A stretch of 62,031 bases of DNA, counting the filler, from Sluysia triapertura (lineage: Eukaryota): the NCBI GenBank assembly GCA_046118255.1. It is 5 parts of 5 records of this genome, joined end to end, with 100 filler letters (N's around TTAATTAATTAA, not from the genome) between each part and the next. Parts side by side here need not be neighbours in the genome. Positions count along the whole stretch, not along the records: positions 1 to 12,184 come from JBJNIA010131404.1; 4 more parts are not named here. The stretch is one strand, 5' to 3'. This document shows positions 1-12,184 of the stretch, piece after piece. The position numbers and the translations under genes are program-made. Below the pieces are notes generated by a model. It did no database searches. It saw only the letters and a program-made list of their open reading frames with translations, and was not told the DNA's origin. Position 1 is the first letter of the stretch. Each line of letters starts with the position of its first letter.

Positions 1-1099
1 TAGTTCTATAATATTAATTATTAAAATCGAAATTAAAATCAATAAATACCCAATTAATCACACAAAGTCATTTACTGTTCACAGATGATAGTTTTTATAT
101 GAAGAAATTATACGAATAAATGTCGACTATACATATATTAAATCATTTATTATGATAATATTCACATAAATATTATTATACAAATAATGCTGACTATATG
201 TTACTATTAATTTATAATCATTTACTATAATATTAAAAATAATTACTCAAATAATAACTATTTCCAGTTAATCAAATCAATTTATAATATTAAAAAGGAT
301 TTATATCTAATCCGATTTAATATAATATTTTAAACAATGTTCTTAAAATTTGATTTCATATTACTGTTATTGATTCTTAGTTTAAAATAACTTTATTCAA
401 TTATAATGCTTTTAAATAACTTAATCTATTCTATCAAATCTTTAATTTAAGTTAATTTTGACCGAGAATAATGTTATTTATTTTTAATTACATAATAATT
501 CTATTCAATCTGAATTTGAGATAATTTATCTTATGCATTATAATATCCTAAATCCTAAGATAATTTTGATCGACTTTTATGCTTTGAAAGTTTGATTTCA
601 TATTGTTATTATTAATTCTTATTTTAAGATAATTTCTTAACTATAATAGTAAGGTTTAGTGTTTATAAATTTTAATTTCGTATTGTCTTTATTGAATCTC
701 AATATAAAATGATTATTTATACAAATTTAATTTAAATTTGATTGCTATTTGTTCTTAAGTTTTGAAGTTATATTAACTGTATATAAGATGAATAATTACT
801 TTATTAAAAATGAGTTTTATTATTTATTTACAAAATGTTAATAGTAAAAATGGGTATTGTGTTTAAAATTCTTTTACAAAACAAAATATTACATAGACCA
901 AAATATTAAAAACCAATGAAAAATATCTACAATTTAATATTTTAAAGAAATTAATAATAAAATTTATAGAGTTTAGATTGATTGTATCTATCTTTTTAAA
1001 ATGACAGTTAAGAAATGTTTAACTGAAATGAGAATAAATTATATTCCGCTATTTAAAATGCGAAGAAACTTATTAATACTAGTTAATGTCAACTTTTTA

Positions 1100-1780
1100 A
1101 CAAATGCTGAATACTTCAGGAATAATATGTTATGACGAATTTAACAATCGAAATGGAACTGTAGATTGTTAGAAAAAATAAATTTTTTAAATCATGCAGC
1201 CGTTATCGGATATCAATAAATTTTAATTTATTCTGCGCACCACAATTTTATGAGAAAAATCCGATTTGGCCTTATTTAATATAGTAGTATCTCGTTACGA
1301 AATTTTATTCCGATTTACTTTAGACAAATATACTACATAACCAAATTTTTTCCAATGAGTTATTTCGGGCGGAATCTCTTTAGATCACACAATGTTCCAC
1401 AAGACATCTCTGGTCCGGTCCTCCAGGCGTTAATAGATTAAAATCATCTCAAATTAATCATGAAAGATAGAAAAATAAACTTCAATAGAATAATAAAAAA
1501 GACCTCAGAAGACACTGCGAAATAAACTTTTAAAAAATTCTACAGAGTGGAATTCAATAAAGCGATTCAGGAAGATAACTCATAAAATTTTCAAGGAAAA
1601 TAAACTCACAGATTTATGTCACGCGCAGAATGATCATGGACAACTTTTTTCTTATGCTTTGTATCCGAAAAATTCTAATGAATAAGAGAATAAAACATCA
1701 CGAAGTTGTCGTCATTGGTAGAATACATTGTAGCAATTGTAACAATTATATGAAATATTGTTACGATAAGCTGTACTAAA
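1100..1780 (+). mobile_element. Possible highly decayed piggyBac-like transposase C-terminal remnant
   Basis: Fragments YDEFNNRNGTVD (cf. YNxxKGGVD) near 1130-1165 and a Cys-rich tail ENKTSRSCRH...HCSNC near 1685-1745 resembling the piggyBac cysteine-rich domain; many stops and frameshifts. Confidence 0.3.
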
Positions 1781-3861
1781 TTTTTCATTAGACAAAATTA
1801 AGCCATATTTACCTGGTAGATAAAAAGACAAATGAGTTTAAAAAATTATCGGATAAATGAATATTCTATTAGGAATAGAAACTGAGAAAGAAAAAGATCG
1901 ACTGCTTACATCAAAAGTTCTACAAAAAGAAATATAAGTATAGACTGGAAAGAAAAATATTTACAGAATTTAAGAGTATTTAATGATGGATATTTCGACA
2001 TCAGCGAAACAAGTATTCTAAGAAAAATGTTGAAAATATTAAGAAAAACAATAAACAAAAAAGGTTAATATCAAATGTACAAAATCCAAATCAAAAAATA
2101 AAATTAAATAAAACATATAATCTCGAATTCATATAACATAGAGATTTATTAATGCAAAGTACAAAATGAACGAAATTGTTAAAACGGATAATATAAAAAA
2201 GAGGATGAGAAGACATATTACGAAAATTTAAAAATGATACAACTCCAGAAACTAATAATGTTTGTTAAGAGAAACTAACCAATTAACAATTTATCGAATA
2301 ACAATTCTGATGTTAAATTAATAATTATTAATGATATTTGAGGTAAAAATAATTGAAGTACTAATTAAAATAGATACAGTTAAAACATTGTCAAAGATCC
2401 TAAGTTTGAGCCACGCTCAGTCCATTTATAAAATTATTATTTATATTAATAATAAGAATTAATAAAGTATGTTTACAGTTCAATTTATATTGACAAAATC
2501 GAACTGTAAACTTAAACACAGTGTATTGATATTAATTAATTGAAATAATCGATTATTAAAAATAATTATTATCAAAGATGTAGTTCAATTTTTTTGAAAA
2601 TATAAACTTTATTAAAATGTTTAAAACTATATTATTTCATCAATATTGTAGTGGCTCAAATCTCTCTACTTATAATTTTATTACAAAAATTGACAAAATC
2701 ATTCAATATAAGTCAATCATAATTTTACACTTTAAGTTATTGTATATTATTTTTGAGAATAAATTTTATCAATTTTATTCTTGAATTGATATTTTTGAAA
2801 ATTGTATACATAAGAGAACTTTCGGTGACGTTATCAGATTGAGAATATTTTCTGACAAAGTCTTTATTAGAACAATTAACTGAAGTTGTATTATGTCATA
2901 AAATTTTTAAAATTGATGCGAACGCATGAATGTATGGTCAGTATTTCGTATTCATCCAATATTTTAGACTTTTTTCCTCTGCCAAATTGCTATTTACACT
3001 TAAACTTATTGAAACCCGTTCTAAAAAATTCAAGTCATATACTAAAGTTGAAATAGATCTCTATGACACGGTTGGAAACAAGTATAATTTTATCAATACT
3101 ATTAAGATCCAATTAAGATGCAGTGATTTTATTCAAATTGATTATAAATTCACGTTTTTCGTATTTATAAAATAAATACGATGATAATGATGATCACAAA
3201 TTCACAGACTCATTTTTAATGTGATTTTGTTATTTATTAAGCTATTTTTGAAGTATTTTCACAATTCTTTGTTCTGGTTTATTTTCTTAAACTTATAAAA
3301 TCATTCTTTTAATATTTCAAACTTTAATTTACTTTTTAGATGATTGGTACTTTAGATGTAATTGAGATCTTACAAATTCATTATCATCAACGTCATTTAT
3401 ATTAAGAAATAGATTTTGAGTGGCCTTATTGATTTGACTGTCATTTGATTGGATACTGAGATTGTTTCTATTCAATGATTCTGAGCACTTGTAAGTATCA
3501 TCTGAAATTATAATGATTATGAAGATAAAAATGATAATGTTATTGAATTATTTGCTTGAGTTGTTTATGTAACAAGTACAATATTTTCATTCTAGAAATT
3601 CTAATGAGTGGAATTTAGGGAATGATTATAGTGATTATAAAAAAGATGTTTAAAAATTCAAATTATTAAATTATCTTATTAAAATTAATTTATATTAACA
3701 ATAAAATTGATTAAATACACAATTTAAACTCTGAAAAGAAATATTGAATTTTTATATACCAAAAACTTAAATTTATATTATTATTATAGCGCTTAAAATA
3801 AATCATTCATTATAATATTTATGAAATAGTAAGAATTTTGCCCTTTTCTGAAATATTTATT

Positions 3862-4742
3862 TGCTAGGTTGTCATCAAAATCCCTAATATAATGATATTA
3901 TCACAAAAGAAAGCCATTTTTTAAAAAAAGAAAATAAATTTTATAAAAAAGAAACCGAAAATTCTGGAATTTTCGAGAATTTCCATTGATTTTGATTGGC
4001 TGATGACCACTAGATATACTGACATCAGAAACATTTATAATAATTATTTAACAATACAAAATTTAGTTTCACGAATTTTACATAATTTCGCTTAGTTTTA
4101 CAAAACTTTATTTCAATTTAATTTCAATTTAAATTAGTCAAATTATTCCACGACGAAGAAAATTAAATCATTTTTGAAGTACTGTTGATTACTGAATTTG
4201 GATTTCATTCCAAAGGCTCTTAAATTGAAAGTTTACATTAGTAAGTTTTTTTACTGTTAAGGATGGTTCTATTCATATAATCTTAAAATACATGTAAATT
4301 CTTTGTAATTGAAATTTTTCTCAATCCCGATTTAATGAGAGTAAAGATTTATCATTAAAATCCTAGTTATTGAAATTAAATACCTTTATAAATTTTAATT
4401 TTAAAATTCATTTAATAATTTTTCTTCTTTTATCTGAATATCTATTACAATTTTTGGGAAAATCTTTAAAAAATCATCATTGTTTGTATTTTTTGATTTT
4501 GAGAACAAGCTAAGAATGTATAATAGAATATTCAATTCAAATAACAATTCAATTTTAGCCACTTGCGTAATTAGCACCTCACTTTTCAAAATAGTTAATT
4601 TTCGAAAGTTGGTTGTTTAGTTAAGTGTGTTACAAGTGTCATCTACAGTTATAGGTATGCTCACTTTAAGTCACAAGTCACATACTATAACCAAACCCTG
4701 CTCAAAATCATTTTGCCTTAGGTAAAGAATAAAATCACAGCA
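3862..4742 (+). mobile_element. Solo LTR, ~0.8-0.9 kb family (LTR-B), copy A
   Basis: Starts TGCTAGGTTGTCATC, contains ATTGGCTGATGAC followed by a TATA-like motif, ends AAATCACAGCA; same blocks as copies at 19370 and 48757; flanks TATT/TTTT (3/4 match). Confidence 0.7.
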
Positions 4743-5048
4743 TTTTATTCTTCCATTGCAAATACAATTAAATTTGCTTCTCTGTTGGTACTGTTCTCAG
4801 TCGAAGTTTAGTTCCATTTGTTTCTGATAGACGAGATTGAAATGCTATTCTAGTAGTTCAAAATCCAATTAGAAACTGAAATCTCTGCACAAAGATATTT
4901 CATAGTCTCATTTTAATTGTTTAACTACGTTTGATGGCAATGGGCGACAAAAATAAATTTGTGAAATGCGCAGGTGTTTCCTATAAAAGGTAATAAAATG
5001 TTGCTTGCTGACGACTGTTTCTAAAAATACTTTATTCTCTTGATTTTG

Positions 5049-5196
5049 NNNNNNNNNNNNNNNNNNNNNNNNNNNNNNNNNNNNNNNNNNNNNNNNNNNN
5101 NNNNNNNNNNNNNNNNNNNNNNNNNNNNNNNNNNNNNNNNNNNNNNNNNNNNNNNNNNNNNNNNNNNNNNNNNNNNNNNNNNNNNNNNNNNNNNNN
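5049..5196. other. Assembly gap (148 N)
   Basis: Run of N without a linker motif. Confidence 0.99.
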
Positions 5197-5620
5197 AGAC
5201 TAAGTTCTTTCTATTCAAAACAGAATCAGAATACATTTATGAATCATTATCTTATTTATTATATGGATTTGAAGCATGCTATCTTAAGAACAACGTGATA
5301 CTGAGTTTACATAAGGTGTGGAAGATATTAAATAAAAATTGAAAGATCTGCGCCATGTTCTTAGATTGAATTAAATTAATTAAGAATGATGTACCAAGAA
5401 ATTCTGAGGTTGTGATTGTTCAAATTTTTCTAAAGATTGTGTGAAGTATAAATTAAAGGTTAAATGATGAATAACTTTATATTTGAGGTGTAGAGTAATT
5501 AATATAAGCTGATGTTTCAAAAAGTATCGAAATTATGTAGAAAGTAAATTATTTGTTTAGCGTTATAAGGTGATTTTGTTTAAAATGATAGAAGTGTAAG
5601 TTATGGTGGTAGCCTCCACA
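5197..5620 (-). mobile_element. Probable 5' end of a cargo-cassette family element, truncated by the gap
   Basis: Minus strand starts TGTGGAGGCTACCACC and continues as a C/A-rich, G-poor tract like copies at 6204, 14781 and 51879. Confidence 0.4.
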
Positions 5621-6203
5621 GTTGTAATAAATCGGAGTGTCCATAAATATCACGATGTCTCATTTTACTCCATGATTATTTTGGAATTTCAGTATATAAA
5701 TCATTGTATAAAATTAAATTGTACTTTTATAATATTTGATTATTAACGATGATAATAATGACAGTTATTCATGTTAATATTACTTGTACAATGCACATAA
5801 ATTTTATTGTGCAATTATTAAAATAGTGTTCGAGGTAAATATTGAACTTATGCGAAAATTGTACAAAATAAATATAAGTACTTTTTAACAATTTAAACGA
5901 TGTCCGAAATCTGAATTCATACTATGTTTAATTTATTACTTTTATAATTGTTTAAATTTTGAGAGTAATATAAATCACCTGAATAAGTAATGCAATAAAA
6001 TTTATCTTATTCTAAATACGTTTAATTAAGGCACAACTTTGTTATGCTATTATTAATTAAATATTTACTAAAGCTGTAATTTTATCGATATATTGCGATT
6101 ATTTGAAATATCATAAATATAGTAAGTGTTTAACTTTAAAATTTGAAAGGTAAGTTTTATTTCTTATTCATTCTGAAAATTCTCAAGTCGAATTTAAAAT
6201 TTT

Positions 6204-8200
6204 TGTTATGGCCAACCTAACAAATTTTATAAAAAAATTGTTTCTTTTTCTTCCGAATTTAACAAAACCACATTCACTTTCAAAATCTTCAATATATATA
6301 TTAAAACTCATTAAAAACACTTTTATACACAGTTCCATATCAACACAATCAAAATTTTATTTTTCAATATTGCACAATTACCTTCTTCACTTTCACTAAA
6401 CCACACTCTTTTCAATGCATTTTTAAGTCACAACATACTAACACCTAAACAGTACTTTCATTTAAAAAATCCACATAAAACATTTATATTATTTCAAAAT
6501 ATTTAAATCATAAACTTTCAACCGTCAAACTCATCTTCAGTCAAAAACATTAAAATACATTTAAAAACATATTAAGCATTTCCTTCTAACATTAGAATCT
6601 CAACTACACTATAAAATTTCATTACAAATACATAACATTAATCAGTTAATTAACTAGTAGACAATTAACTACTTTAAACTAAGAAATAGATTTTTAAATA
6701 TGTTAATAAATAATACAAGAATAAGAAGGAAAGATAATGTTTATGAGATTTAGAAGATTTATGTTTTATATTAAAATAATAATAATAACATTACAATTAT
6801 TATTGTTATTATCACCATTTTTAATTTTTATCATTTTTATCATTCAAATTATTCAATTTATTATTCAATTTAGTAGCTACCATCGTCAATGCCGACACTT
6901 TTAGTTCATGTGTACAGTCAGCGTCATTAGTGATGGTGGTCGTGATGACAATTCATTATGTACTAAATTAGCTTAAATTATGTATTTTTATTGACTGCCC
7001 AATTGAAATCATTAATCTTGGTTACGTTACGTGTTTTAATTAGCAGCCACTAGTATTGCGAAACAGATGAAACAAAATTTTTATTACAAAGGCGGCATTT
7101 TTAATTAAGCAGCCAGACACAACAACTAAAATTTATTATTGACTACTACGACACAATTTTATGATTAAGCAAAAAGTTAAAAATTCTTGTCGCTGAAAAT
7201 TAAGACAAAATCGTTTCAATAATCGTCTCATATTAATGTCAAAAGTTATATCAAGTTTATGAAAATTCACACAAAGTATGTAGACTTAAATTATGAAATG
7301 ATGGAATTAAATATTCATAAAGAAGGAACTTGTGGTGAAGAAAAGATAAAGGCGTTCTCTCTCTTTGAGGAAGCTGAAGTTTATAATCGTCTAATAAGTG
7401 AAGTTCAAAATCCAGATAATTCAATCCCGATCGATATTAATTCTCATGAGTGTAAAGAATCCGAATTGTTAAAAGTAATAGTTGATAATAAAATTCAAGA
7501 ATTTGTAATGTGAAAACTGGAAAAAGGTGAATCAAGGAACGAAAACACGAAATTGTCAGAAGAGTGGCTTCAATTAAAGCAATTTGCTGACTACATGAGT
7601 AAAGAAAATGATGTAATTACAAATGAAACTAATTGGTTACCTCTATACTATGTTCATGAAATGATTATATTACAAAGTAAGAATGCCATGTACGGTCAGT
7701 CATCATTAGATGTAAATAATGTAATAGATATAGTCAATGTATTATTAAAGACTCCAAGGAGGATTAATAAAATGCAAAGCAAGTGTATCAAACAGAAGAA
7801 AGGAATAAAGTACTTGATCAATGATGTTTTTAAGTTGCTATTGATGTTTATTAATAATCAAAGGACAAAACGCAATCTTCTAAAAATAAAAGATGAAGTT
7901 TAATCAGTGTACAAACTGAGTTATTCAAAGTATACGTTACAAATGGTGAAAACGTTATTAATATTACCGAGTCCAAGATCAACACAGAATTAGGATTCGA
8001 CAATGTTTTTACACGATGTCATCAGTCAAATTCATTAAGGATTCTCAATGAATGCTTTGATTTCCTACAATCAATGGAACATATTAAGAACTTAAAGGAT
8101 GGAGCTGCCAATATTACTAGGAAATTAAAAGTAACTGACTTTCCTTATATTTTTAAAATATTTATCATTGTTAATTTTGATTTTTATTATTTTATTCCTT
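6204..8200 (+). mobile_element. Cargo-cassette family element, copy I (3' end not defined)
   Basis: TGTTATGGCCAACC start, C-rich arm ~6260-6640, TTA-rich tract, hairpin block 6873-6941, GCAGCCAC motif ~7043, then a decayed ORF from 7259. Confidence 0.55.
7259..8160 (+). pseudogene. Decayed ORF of unknown function (cargo of cassette I)
   Basis: ORFs 7259-7513 and 7553-7903 are in the same frame, separated by one TGA; after a frameshift a reading frame continues (LFKVYVTNGENVINITESK...MEHIKNLKDGAA). Confidence 0.5.
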
Positions 8201-10879
8201 TTAGTATAGTAAGAAGCGTGAATTCAAAACTAGTTCAATATCGTGTTATAAATGAACAAAATTCTAGATTAACATTTAAAAAATTTGATAAATTTTATAA
8301 AATTCGTTATGAATTGTCTTTTATTATTTTTCAATGTTGTGTAACGTTTAGAATTTTTAAAAAACTTAGTACTATATAAAGTTAATAAATATTCAAATGC
8401 TATAAAAATAAACAATTTCAAAGTTTTGCTTAATGAAGACCAATGTAAATTAAAATTAAAAACTGAAAACAACTTAAAACATTTAATACCACAACAATTT
8501 ATTCGCCTTAAAATAAGTTCACGTCTGATCTGGCTGAACGACACAAACTTTTGTACATATGCACTTATAACATTTTCTTGTTTTTACTTTCGAAAAGCAT
8601 TGTAATATTTTAATTTCTGACGCAAGATTATAATCATCTATCAATATTTCAATAATAAATTTTTTAGTTATTAAAATTATTTCTTAGATTTTTGGTTAAA
8701 CTATTTAGTTGAGCACTTTAAAATTTTCTAATTAAACTCTGTTTCATTTTTTAATTCAAAACTGAGTAAATCAAAATAAAATTCAACCTGAATAATATTT
8801 TCTGTTACACTAATATTACATTTAACAATTACCACAATGCACATAAAGTAATATGAAAAAAACAAAGTAAATGTTCCAAATAAATGTTATAACTACGAAT
8901 GTAAATCAAATATCAATTAAGTAACAATTAGATTATACAGAGCACCAATAACGTAAAAATTATTAAATGCAGCAAGGGTGACAACTCATCAGAACTTAAA
9001 ATGTTAGAGAGCAAGTTTAGTCTTTGTTAAACTAAGAAGAATTAGATTATACTGAAATTATAATATCACAAGATTAAAACTATCAAAGGACAAAAATTAA
9101 ATTAAAATGGGGTGTATCCTAAAAATATTCAAAAATATTTAATCATATTATAAGCCCAAATGACAAAGGTCAAAATACAATTTACAAGGGCAGCTTCCTT
9201 AAAATATTAAAAATCAATATTAAAATTATTATTTTAAAATGTAATAAAATAATAAAGATCCAAAGTCTACCAAATGCGTGAATTATGAATCTTCATTGAA
9301 TGTTGTGGTAACTATTGTTATTGCTGTTGTCTCTGTTATTGTGTTAAAAATTTTACAGCTTTAATTTTTTACTTTCTCATTATCCATCACTCCTGATTTC
9401 TGCAGTTAAACATTTTCTTACACAAGTCATTTGAACATCCTTCGAGAGCTGAGCTCATAATAACAGCTCCGAAATTTATTTGGTATTACTTGTCAGACTT
9501 TATTAAACAAGGAACATAACATAAGGGTCAACAATAATTTTTCTCTACTATACTCGACTTATTTTCTCCAAAATTATTTCTCACAATAAGATAACAATCA
9601 TTAGTATTATAGGCATTCATAAAAATAATGATTTTAACTTTAGTTTTTAGAATTTAATTAATTTTTAGTTTTTCACACTCCATGTTCTTAGTCTCAAACA
9701 GAACAATTATTTTCTTTTGCGTACACTTTTACATTTCAAAACATTTTAAATTCACAATCTTACATCAAAATCAAACTTACATCCAAAATCATTAATACAT
9801 TTAAATTTCATTTAGGACATCTTAACTCATAATCTCAGAACATTAGACTACAATTTACATCTTAAACTATCAAATATACATGTGAAACTAATTCAATACA
9901 TTTTAATGTTCCAATCTTCTAACTTCCAAACCTTCCTTTCTTTCAAAAACATCAAATTCATACAAAACACTTCCAGTTCATATCTTACAACATTAAAATT
10001 ACATTCAAGTTCAAATCATTAATGCACATTAAAACCTTCAAAATAATTCAAAACTTCTCAAAATCACTGCCACTTTCAGAAGTAACGGTCTATAAATAAA
10101 AACTTCATAAAAACATTTTATTCCCAATATAAGCCGCATATGCAGCCTAAAAAACTCTCTAAGTTCACTACTCTTTAATTCTCATTCACACTAAGAAAAT
10201 CAACTATATTAAGATAATTTAAATATGTTAAGAAATAGAAATACAAAGAACTAAAAGAATGATTTTTTGTTATTATCATTTTAAAAAGTTTATGCGATTT
10301 ATAATAATAATAATAAGATTAATATTATTATTACTATCATCATTTTTATTTTTGATTATTTTAAATAATAATTTTATTTATCAACTGTGTAACTACCACT
10401 ACATGTGATGACATTATTAATTCACAATTATAGTTTAATGTCACTACTGATAGTGGTTATTTTATTCAACACACAAAAAGTTGTATATTAGTTAACTTGC
10501 CATCAATCGACAGGTAATTTTAATCAATTAATGTTGCTTTACTAACTGTCGACTGATGACAGCTGATTGCATTTATGATCAATATTTCTGATTAAAATTA
10601 TCAATACCGTTTGCTTTTCGAGTTTTGATTGGGCAGCCACTCATAGTAAAAAAGAATTATCATCAAATTTATTAATACAGTTAACAATTTATAATGCTAT
10701 TCAACAGTCTATTATAAGAGTTATTCTGTATATTATTGAAAAACACTCATCAATATCGTATATTCGTCTTACCCTCGCTTGTGTGCAGCAATATTTGATA
10801 TTCTAATAGGAAAATTGCGAAATAAGAAACTAACTTTAAAGATTTGATATTTTATAAAGATACAAAAATAGTCCACGGA

Positions 10880-11850
10880 CTAAATTTAGATGCTTAATTA
10901 ATGATAACGAACACATCAAGCTTAGATTAGAAGCTCTTTCAGAATCAACAAATGTCGGAATTAAGGATGAAGAAAATGTTGAAATAACTATTCTACGAGT
11001 TTATGCTACAACTGATGTCAACAGAGTACAAGTACAGGCGAAATAGATATCGAAAGATGTGGTTTAAGTATTATTCATTAATATTAGATGATGATGGTTT
11101 CATGTATGTCTAATTTGGTAATACTAAAGATTTGGAAAATAATATTATTCGCTTTGTTGGAAACATTGTTAATCGAATTCAAGAAGATTATTTAAGTATT
11201 TTATCATATTTTAGATTTTTTGAAAGAATTCCGGAACAATCCGATTCACGTGTTGAAGAAATTTTATCTAATGCCAAACAAAATGCCGATGGTCTAAAAA
11301 TTATTAGTGCTGAACGTACTTAGTCAGATGTAACTAAAGTTATTAAAGGTAGATATGCATGTGATTTATTTATTTTTTGTGATATGTTTATTTTGTAAAA
11401 AATGATTTTGAAACTATAAAAAAACAATTTTGTGAGCTTTAAGTAGACGTACAGAGAGATGATGTTTAGAGTGTCACTCTTTTTAGTTTAAATATTGATA
11501 ATGAAAACGAATTAGAAATTATTCATAAGCATTTTAAGTTAAATATTAATGACGTAATTTTTAAATGTTATTTATTTGACAAACGTGATTCGAATATCAC
11601 ATTAAAGAATTCACAAGAGGTTTTCATTGTGTTGGAAATAAAAAAACGAATTAAACATAATCGATTACATATATCAATTAGAATTGTTGAAATCGTTAGC
11701 AAGACCGGAAATAATTCGGGAGCTTAGAACTTCGACGCCTCCAGAGATTCCAGTCAGTGGCAATATACTTTTTAAAATTGCCTTTGAAAGAGCGTTTTTC
11801 AAGTTGATACGTCCACTAACGAGGCTCAAAGGACAAGATCAGATCTGGAT
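10880..11850 (+). pseudogene. Intronless decayed CCA-adding enzyme (class II tRNA nucleotidyltransferase, TRNT1-like)
   Basis: Collinear motifs EENVEITILRVYATTD (cf. EENFEITTLRIDVTTD), IDIERCGLSI (cf. DAERRDLTIN), DLENNIIRFVG...RIQEDYLSILSYFRFF...GLKIISAER (cf. RFVG..RIQEDYLRILRYFRF..ISGER) and PPEIPVSG (cf. PPFPVSG); several stops and frameshifts, no introns seen. Confidence 0.85.
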
Positions 11851-11880
11851 GATTAGTAACGACACTCCAAGTCTGGTTTG

Positions 11881-11946
11881 TGCATGTATGCTGTGACTCC
11901 AGACGGACAATGTACAAAGTATGGCAATAATTGTATATACGCACAC
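11881..11946 (+). pseudogene. CCCH zinc finger coding segment (C-x9-C-x6-C-x3-H) directly 3' of the TRNT1-like region
   Basis: KSGL-CMYAVTPDGQCTKYGNNCIYAH-NTTEL; the CxxYGxxCxYAHxxxEL pattern is typical of TTP/ZFP36-like CCCH fingers. Confidence 0.75.
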
Positions 11947-12107
11947 AATACAACTGAACTAACGGACAACTTCTCTTGGATTTGGAACTTAACAAACCAT
12001 TTTCATAGAATAAAACAATTGTTGTCATCATTGGACACAAGGCCATTCGATTGCAATAATCATCATAACTCAAAAGCAATTGTTAATTTTAATCTGATTT
12101 ATATTAT

Positions 12108-12184
12108 TGTTAGACTTCGTAAAATGGACTGACCGGGGATCGAACCCGGAACCATCGCTGCGCAGTTCGAATGCTCTACCACTG
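12108..12184 (-). mobile_element. tRNA-bearing mini-LTR (LTR-A), truncated by contig end
   Basis: Minus strand: CAGTGGTAGAGCATTCGAACTGCGCAGCGATGGTTCCGGGTTCGATCCCCGGTCAGTCCATTTTACGAAGTCTAACA. Strand is given in tRNA sense. Confidence 0.85.

What the first reader, a model, noticed from the sequence alone, without database searches (positions are those of the whole stretch)
10880..11965. Mobile-cassette cargo: CCA-adding-enzyme-like gene apparently fused to a CCCH zinc finger
Seen: an intronless, decayed but collinear TRNT1-like sequence (EITxLR, ERxxLxI, RFVG/RIQEDY/YFRF, ISAER, PVSG) starts ~250 bp downstream of the cassette's ATTGGGCAGCCAC motif. A CCCH finger begins about 40 codons after PVSG, roughly where TRNT1 normally ends. 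Known: animal TRNT1 is a housekeeping class II nucleotidyltransferase without a CCCH finger, and CCCH fingers bind RNA. Inference: a transposon captured a spliced TRNT1 copy and joined it to an RNA-binding finger, giving a possible RNA-targeted tailing enzyme (primer tRNA repair or element RNA 3' modification). The fusion crosses a frameshift and stops here, so it needs an intact copy to confirm.
Basis: partly seen in the sequence, partly recalled or inferred. Interest (0 to 1): 0.82.

Follow-up and report, generated by a model that had tools for sequence, protein, structure and literature searches.

The report
Dead repeated TRNT1 copy with CCCH finger
This is a broken copy of the animal enzyme that finishes tRNA ends, followed directly by a real RNA-binding zinc finger; it belongs to a family of tens of copies in this genome, but it shows no recognisable catalytic part and no single reading frame joining enzyme and finger.

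Summary
From about 10885 to 11875 (+) there is a collinear sequence like the CCA-adding enzyme TRNT1. Its best piece scores E 6e-12 against human TRNT1 and E 8e-26 against my own TRNT1 profile. It has no room for introns, changes frame five times and has at least five in-frame stops.

Directly after it, at 11860-11958, lies a genuine Unkempt-type CCCH finger (Pfam E 4.7e-7, same C-x9-C-x6-C-x3-H spacing as Unkempt finger 3).

It is not a lone pseudogene. In the one public run that holds the stretch, 23-47 different contigs cover the TRNT1 part. About 33 cover the junction and about 10 reach beyond the finger. Nearly all of them lack the two stops that stand just before the finger here.

No catalytic head (GGxVRD, DxD) is detectable, and two active-site motifs are altered. 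Enzyme tail and finger lie in different frames. No transposon gene or element end was found.

None of 270 TRNT1 relatives in hand has such a finger.

Verdict: a dead member of an amplified, TRNT1-derived chimeric family. A working RNA-tailing enzyme is not supported, and an intact fusion elsewhere in the genome remains untested.

The parts
10434..10770 (+). Possible, unproven relic of the TRNT1 head.
   Evidence: These are weak tblastn look-alikes, collinear with TRNT1 residues about 45-88. Hypsibius TRNT1 has an intron at the matching place, followed by GAT TTG GCG ACC ACC = DLATT. My profile gives no significant hit here, and MAFFT misplaces these pieces. One contig of another copy joins 10648 to 10895, a skip of 246 = 3 x 82 bases.
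10885..11043 (+). TRNT1-like piece in frame 1 (..FRCLINDNEH..VEITILRVYATTDVNRVQVQAK), ending in a stop at 11044.
   Evidence: Profile positions 99-137 match at 10915-11031, E 0.22 alone but collinear with the other pieces. tblastn with many animal TRNT1 proteins gives 42-52% identity over 10960-11037.
11040..11078 (+). Motif B region, shifted to frame 0 (EIDIERCGLSIIH). RRD reads RCG.
   Evidence: Translation. Its position between the two neighbouring pieces fits the TRNT1 sequence DA.RRDLTINSMF.
11075..11395 (+). Core TRNT1 piece in frame 2. It reads SLILDDDGFMYV, stop at 11111-11113, then FGNTKDLENNIIRFVGNIVNRIQEDYLSILSYFRFF..ISAERT, stop at 11321-11323 at the place of a conserved Trp, then SDVTKVIKGRYACDLF.
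   Evidence: Human TRNT1 in the PDB, E 6.3e-12. Own profile, E 8e-26. Whole-library phmmer gave 584 hits, the best 51-55% identical. tblastn gives 41-48% identity over about 100 residues.
11416..11640 (+). TRNT1 body region in frame 1 (..SVTLFSLNIDNENELEIIHKHFKLN..), with in-frame stops at 11440-11442 and 11467-11469.
   Evidence: Profile positions 288-348, E 0.013. tblastn with P0153 and P0031.
11642..11875 (+). TRNT1 tail in frame 2 (..ELLKSLARPEIIRELRTSTPPEIPVSGNILFK..LTRLKGQDQIWMISNDTPS). It reaches the conserved L..LK..W..S motif, roughly 15-40 residues before TRNT1 proteins normally end.
   Evidence: Profile positions 350-386, E 0.064. P0130 (Octopus) aligns over 11642-11860, E 5e-4. MAFFT alignment.
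11854..11859 (+). Two stop codons (TAG TAA) in the finger's frame, immediately before it. They are private to this copy.
   Evidence: Of the contigs laid here, 32 and 33 read G at 11854 and C at 11858. That is 1830 of 1901 and 1893 of 1944 units of summed depth (table 3).
11860..11958 (+). Single Unkempt-type CCCH zinc finger in frame 1 (RHSKSGLCMYAVTPDGQCTKYGNNCIYAHNTTEL). The Cys and His codons are at 11881, 11911, 11932 and 11944.
   Evidence: Pfam PF25427 zf-CCCH_UNK, E 4.7e-7, 30.0 bits against a 31.1 cut-off. PDB 5elh Unkempt finger 3, E 0.0066, and tristetraprolin, E 0.038. Chance expectation is 0.02 per window.
11959..12132 (+). Open tail after the finger, with no recognisable similarity, ending in a stop at 12130-12132. 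Its last bases overlap the abundant repeat that starts near 12108.
   Evidence: ORF list. No Pfam or PDB match beyond the finger. About 9-10 contigs of other copies still cover 11984-12001.

Best explanation
This is a dead member of a moderately repeated family (tens of copies). The family's founder carried an intronless, TRNT1-derived sequence, from about residue 80-100 of the enzyme to near its end. A single Unkempt-type CCCH finger took the place of the enzyme's last residues.

The founder most likely arose as a chimera, either a retroposed or captured TRNT1 copy joined to a finger-coding fragment. It was then multiplied, either as passenger DNA of a mobile element or by segmental duplication. 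That origin is inferred.

The copy in the window cannot make a protein, and this is shown directly: it has five frame changes, at least five in-frame stops, no detectable catalytic head, and altered motifs B and D.
For: - TRNT1 homology is collinear and without intron-sized gaps.
- The finger is real and starts within 12 bases of the last TRNT1-like residues.
- Multi-copy status comes: 23 contigs at 10999, 47 at 11250, 29 at 11629, 32-33 at 11854/11858 and 9-10 at 11984/12001. Most differ from the window. Summed depth is 300-1900, against 12-23 for single contigs of this locus.
- The repeated stretch runs without a break in coverage across the enzyme-finger junction.
- The majority of copies lack the two stops before the finger. 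At 11250 they read His, as human TRNT1 does, where the window reads Arg. So the founder was less decayed than this copy.
- The closest named relatives are animal TRNT1 proteins, at only 44-55% identity.
- None of 270 TRNT1 relatives has a CCCH pattern. The 120 best profile hits carry only PF01743 and PF12627, some also PF13735.
Against: - No copy other than this one could be read base by base, so one frame for enzyme and finger was never observed.
- Here the two are one base out of register. No majority insertion or deletion at the junction was listed, although 40 indel rows were not shown.
- No transposon hallmark was found in the 12 kb.
- Summed contig depth is not a copy number, and at 80% likeness in 25% G+C DNA some laid contigs may be spurious.
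- The host's own TRNT1 gene was not seen. Its intron content and its lack of a finger are inferred from other animals.
Confidence: 0.7

Rival explanations
1. The TRNT1 fragment and the finger are two unrelated gene fragments that a non-autonomous DNA transposon (Helitron-like or Pack-type) picked up side by side. They were never one reading frame, and the family has always been non-coding cargo.
For: The enzyme tail and the finger are in different frames, and no junction indel is reported for the majority of copies. The catalytic head is missing, as expected for a captured fragment. The finger's frame has no ATG upstream of the finger. Chimeric capture of host gene fragments is well described for Helitrons, for example in PMC4778049 and PMC2575219 as listed.
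Against: DNA-level capture usually keeps introns, yet the TRNT1 part has none over about 300 codons. The finger starts exactly where TRNT1 homology stops, with no spacer. No Helitron or terminal-inverted-repeat ends were found.
Confidence: 0.25
2. The host has a lineage-specific, expanded gene family of working TRNT1-CCCH proteins, RNA-binding or RNA-tailing. The window holds one dead member of that family.
For: There are tens of related copies. The majority lack the stops just before the finger and are closer to TRNT1 at 11250. The finger replaces the enzyme's extreme C-terminus cleanly.
Against: Active-site motifs are changed and the head is undetectable here. No related protein closer than 55% identity exists among 1.84 billion cluster representatives. 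No RNA run holds the stretch. Most laid contigs are 5-20% diverged, as in neutrally decaying repeats.
Confidence: 0.15
3. This is an ordinary single processed pseudogene of TRNT1, with a chance CCCH-like pattern next to it.
For: The sequence is intronless and decayed, and may lack its 5' end, as pseudogenes made by LINE (long interspersed element) retrotransposons often do.
Against: It is multi-copy. The finger matches a curated profile and Unkempt finger 3 with identical spacing. The pattern is expected 0.02 times per window. No poly(A) tract follows.
Confidence: 0.04

Closest known systems
Animal TRNT1 (class II CCA-adding tRNA nucleotidyltransferase; Pfam PF01743 PolyA_pol + PF12627 PolyA_pol_RNAbd)
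   Same: The neck, body and tail regions are collinear, from ..EITTLR.. through RFVG..RIQEDYLRILRYFRF, ISGER and FPVSG to the L..LK..W..S tail. Identity is 41-48% over the core.
   Different: - No detectable head with GGxVRD and DxD.
- Motif B reads RCG and motif D reads EDYLS.
- Frameshifts and stops are present.
- The last residues are replaced by a CCCH finger.
- It is multi-copy.
None of 270 TRNT1 relatives has such a finger.
Unkempt-type CCCH zinc fingers (Pfam PF25427; PDB 5elh)
   Same: The spacing is the same, C-x9-C-x6-C-x3-H, as is the lead-in R-x-x-K-[ST]-G-[IL]-C. The residues CTK.G..C..AH....L are shared.
   Different: Unkempt has six fingers in two clusters plus a RING domain. 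Here there is one finger, with no other Unkempt-like sequence. The score is 1 bit below Pfam's cut-off.
Host gene fragments or retrocopies amplified as passengers of mobile elements (Helitron or Pack-type capture, chimeric retrogenes)
   Same: The sequence is host-derived, incomplete, joined to foreign coding sequence, present in tens of diverged copies, and decaying.
   Different: The carrier element is not identified. No ends, no transposase or Rep/helicase and no reverse transcriptase were found in the window.
Zinc-finger-bearing RNA tailing enzymes (TUT4/TUT7 with CCHC knuckles; Trf4-Air in TRAMP). This is from general knowledge and was not tested here.
   Different: Those enzymes are Pol-beta-type non-canonical poly(A) or poly(U) polymerases of another class, with CCHC or C2H2 fingers. 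Here the catalytic part is not detectable, so the resemblance is only conceptual.

Membership tests
TRNT1 / class II CCA-adding enzyme | Sequence homology to PolyA_pol and the RNA-binding neck and body | tested here: met
   PDB human TRNT1, E 6.3e-12. Own TRNT1 profile, E 8e-26, plus three collinear weaker hits. Pfam itself did not report PF01743 or PF12627 on the short pieces.
TRNT1 / class II CCA-adding enzyme | Catalytic head, motif A (GGxVRD and DxD carboxylates) | tested here: not met
   No hit to profile positions 1-98 on either strand of the window. The only candidates read ..TKSC ILVNLPSID and SFDWAAT, and are not significant.
TRNT1 / class II CCA-adding enzyme | Motif B (RRD) and motif D (EDxxR) intact | tested here: not met
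   This copy reads ERCGLSI at 11052-11072 and QEDYLSIL at 11180-11203. The state in other copies is unknown.
TRNT1 / class II CCA-adding enzyme | Uninterrupted reading frame | tested here: not met
   The frame path is 1>0>2>1>2>1. In-frame stops lie at 11044, 11111, 11321, 11440 and 11467.
CCCH (C3H1) zinc finger, Unkempt type | C-x(n)-C-x(n)-C-x3-H with the family's spacing and flanking residues | tested here: met
   PF25427, E 4.7e-7, 30.0 bits against 31.1. Spacing is identical to 5elh finger 3.
Processed (retroposed) pseudogene | No introns where the parent gene has them; poly(A) tail; target-site duplications | tested here: inconclusive
   There are no intron-sized gaps over profile positions 99 to about 415. 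Hypsibius TRNT1 has three introns in that span, but the mite Brevipalpus has none. The host's own gene was not seen. No poly(A) tract follows, and duplications cannot be sought without knowing the ends.
   Multiple copies: yes. Shared ends or element enzymes: none found. The motif ATTGGGCAGCCAC is single in this piece.

The most novel reading that the evidence does not exclude
Somewhere in this genome there are intact members in which a TRNT1-derived tRNA-binding body, with or without a working head, is translated together with the CCCH finger. They would be carried and multiplied by a mobile element. That would be a class II nucleotidyltransferase scaffold turned into an element-encoded RNA-binding or 3'-end-modifying protein.
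Probability: 0.12. Interest if true: 0.7.

Novelty: new member of a known kind. Interest (0 to 1): 0.33.

Why it matters
As it stands, this is one more case of a host housekeeping gene copied, joined to a foreign domain and multiplied until it decayed. It is useful for repeat annotation, and it warns that TRNT1-like hits in this genome are mostly pseudogenes.

It would matter more if an intact copy exists. No CCA-adding-enzyme relative with a CCCH finger appeared among the 270 relatives examined. A mobile element that carries a tRNA-end-binding module would be a new kind of cargo.

Tried and rejected
- **Exact look-up:** eight window ORFs were looked up in the 15-billion-protein collection, and none was found.
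- **Word searches:** the finger piece and the unknown ORF piece 7514-7900 gave no candidates.
- **'Cassette motif' as a repeat end:** the only other near-match, 6991 (-), has no homology around it. The self-comparison found only a 152-base, 74% repeat (6693-6837 and 10218-10362) and small AT-rich repeats.
- **Internal duplication:** I tested whether one could explain the two IRMIN..EKH look-alikes. The DNA alignment score was 27, against a shuffle mean of 28.8, so I rejected it.
- **Short intron between enzyme tail and finger:** no in-phase GT..AG pair of workable length exists between 11780 and 11872, by reading the sequence.
- **The +AG insertion at 11788:** two contigs carry it. By reading the sequence, it leads to a stop, so it does not join the frames.
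- **Pfam scans:** 25 other open pieces across the window gave nothing below E 0.01.
- **Literature:** no report of a TRNT1-CCCH fusion or of TRNT1 captured by an element turned up.
- **Phylogenetic placement:** not attempted, because the sequence is equally distant (44-55% identity) from all animal TRNT1 proteins and is decayed.

Full report
**Setting**

The piece (1-12184) has 24.8% G+C and one N run, 5049-5196. Only one public run holds the stretch. Its organism is coded, it is kept as contigs, and no RNA run holds the stretch. The closest named proteins to the coding relic are animal TRNT1 enzymes: tardigrade, mite and cockroach, then molluscs, insects, chelicerates and vertebrates. So the source is most likely an AT-rich invertebrate genome.

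**Checking the observation: the TRNT1-like part**

- The piece 11114-11320 (FGNTKDLENNIIRFVGNIVNRIQEDYLSILSYFRFFERI...ISAERT) matches human TRNT1 structures at E 6.3e-12.
- Against 1.84 billion cluster representatives it finds 584 relatives, the best only 51-55% identical.
- I built a profile from 72 full-length relatives and ran it against every stop-free piece of both strands. Four pieces on the + strand hit in the right order:

| Window | Profile positions | E-value |
|---|---|---|
| 10915-11031 | 99-137 | 0.22 |
| 11114-11317 | 170-236 | 8e-26 |
| 11473-11661 | 288-348 | 0.013 |
| 11675-11785 | 350-386 | 0.064 |

- The distances in DNA equal the distances in the profile to within a few codons. 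There are therefore no introns between about residue 99 and the tail.
- MAFFT places the tail piece on the conserved FPVSG ... L..LK..W..S end of TRNT1.
- The reading path goes frame 1 > 0 > 2 > 1 > 2. In-frame stops lie at 11044, 11111, 11321 (at the place of a conserved Trp), 11440 and 11467.

**Checking the observation: the finger**

RHSKSGLCMYAVTPDGQCTKYGNNCIYAHNTTEL (11860-11961, frame 1) matches Pfam zf-CCCH_UNK at E 4.7e-7. The score is 30.0 bits, one bit under the curated cut-off. Its best solved relative is finger 3 of Unkempt, with identical C-x9-C-x6-C-x3-H spacing and the same R..K[ST]G[IL]C lead-in. Tristetraprolin is next. The bare pattern occurs once in the six frames of the window, against 0.02 expected. 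The finger is real.

I laid the contigs of the one run on 6200-12184 at 80% likeness or more, and 14,744 contigs were placed. Much of that belongs to three very abundant short repeats, at 9600-9799, 10200-10399 and from about 12108. The TRNT1 part is covered by many different contigs that disagree with the window:
- 23 contigs at 10999
- 47 at 11250
- 40 at 11274
- 29 at 11629
- 32-33 at 11854 and 11858
- 9-10 at 11984 and 12001

Single contigs of this locus have depth 12-23, whereas the sums are 300-1900. By contrast, one contig alone covers 9185. The TRNT1-like sequence and its junction with the finger are therefore present in tens of diverged copies, and about ten copies still match beyond the finger.

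Two majority letters are telling.
- At 11854 and 11858, nearly all other copies read G and C. The two stops that stand directly before the finger in its own frame are thus private to this copy.
- At 11250 the majority codes His, as human TRNT1 does at that column, where the window codes Arg.

The founder of the family was therefore less decayed than this copy.

**What argues against a tailing enzyme**

- The profile finds nothing for positions 1-98, the catalytic head with GGxVRD and DxD, anywhere in the window. This is normally the best conserved part.
- In this copy motif B reads RCG for RRD, and motif D reads EDYLS for EDxxR.
- The TRNT1 tail is in frame 2 up to at least the Trp at 11846-11848, while the finger's lead-in begins at 11860 in frame 1. 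The two are one base out of register within about 12 bases.
- No in-phase intron can bridge them.
- The finger frame has no ATG upstream of the finger.
- No majority insertion or deletion at the junction is listed, although 40 indel rows were not shown.

**The 'cassette motif'**

ATTGGGCAGCCAC occurs once (10628). The only near-match, at 6991 (-), has no homology around it.

In frame 1 the motif reads (F)DWAAT. Together with ILVNLPSID at 10485-10511 and a GT..AG-bounded gap at 10514-10622, it lines up with TRNT1 ..ILMNIVPV|DIDLATT... In Hypsibius an intron sits at just that place, and the next exon begins GAT ATT GAT TTG GCG ACC ACC. One contig of another copy joins 10648 to 10895, a skip of 246 = 3 x 82 bases.

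This suggests that the motif is a relic of the enzyme's own head rather than an element end. The matches are not significant on their own. I give this reading about even odds.

**Mobile element?**

I found no transposase, reverse transcriptase, Rep/helicase, terminal repeat or poly(A) tail. Multi-copy status is the only evidence for mobility. Segmental or tandem amplification would give the same picture.

**Comparison with what is known**

None of the 270 TRNT1 relatives fetched has a CCCH pattern. The 120 best profile hits all carry PF01743 and PF12627 only, some also PF13735. The literature searches found no TRNT1-CCCH protein and no TRNT1 capture.

The closest known kind is a host gene fragment or retrocopy joined to foreign coding sequence and multiplied as a passenger.

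**Verdict**

The best reading is a dead member of an amplified, TRNT1-derived chimeric family. Whether enzyme tail and finger were ever one protein is about even. That intact, working copies exist is unlikely, about 0.12-0.15, but it is not excluded.

Noticed in passing
window 7223-8376 (+): A decayed open stretch of about 385 codons: 96 and 129 codons in one frame separated by one stop, then 160 codons after a frame change. It has no Pfam, PDB or word-search relative. It is itself multi-copy in the run (17-31 contigs differ from the window at 7272-8135).
   Followed up: partly
window 12125-12184 (-), repeat from about 12108: A tRNA-like sequence cut by the piece's edge (Rfam tRNA 23.8 bits, below the cut-off of 29). 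It is followed by TTTT on its own strand. It belongs to an extremely abundant repeat (more than 128 contigs, summed depth about 6e5), probably a tRNA-derived SINE. Its anticodon stem does not pair.
   Followed up: partly
window 9600-9799 and 10200-10399; also 6693-6837: Two very abundant short repeats (summed depth about 1e5 and 4.6e4). 10218-10362 has a 74% identical direct copy at 6693-6837.
   Followed up: no
window 8519-9649: A single contig with one differing letter covers this stretch, and at 9185 it is the only contig. So at least part of it (around 9185) looks single-copy, lying between repeated blocks.
   Followed up: no
window 337-715: Four diverged copies (70-81%) of a 57-base AT-rich unit, at irregular spacing of 80-134 bases.
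   Followed up: no
L002 (Hypsibius exemplaris TRNT1 locus) and L001 (Brevipalpus obovatus): Intron content of TRNT1 differs widely between animals. Hypsibius has four introns within the coding sequence. The mite has none across residues 12-455. So 'intronless' alone does not prove retroposition.
   Followed up: yes
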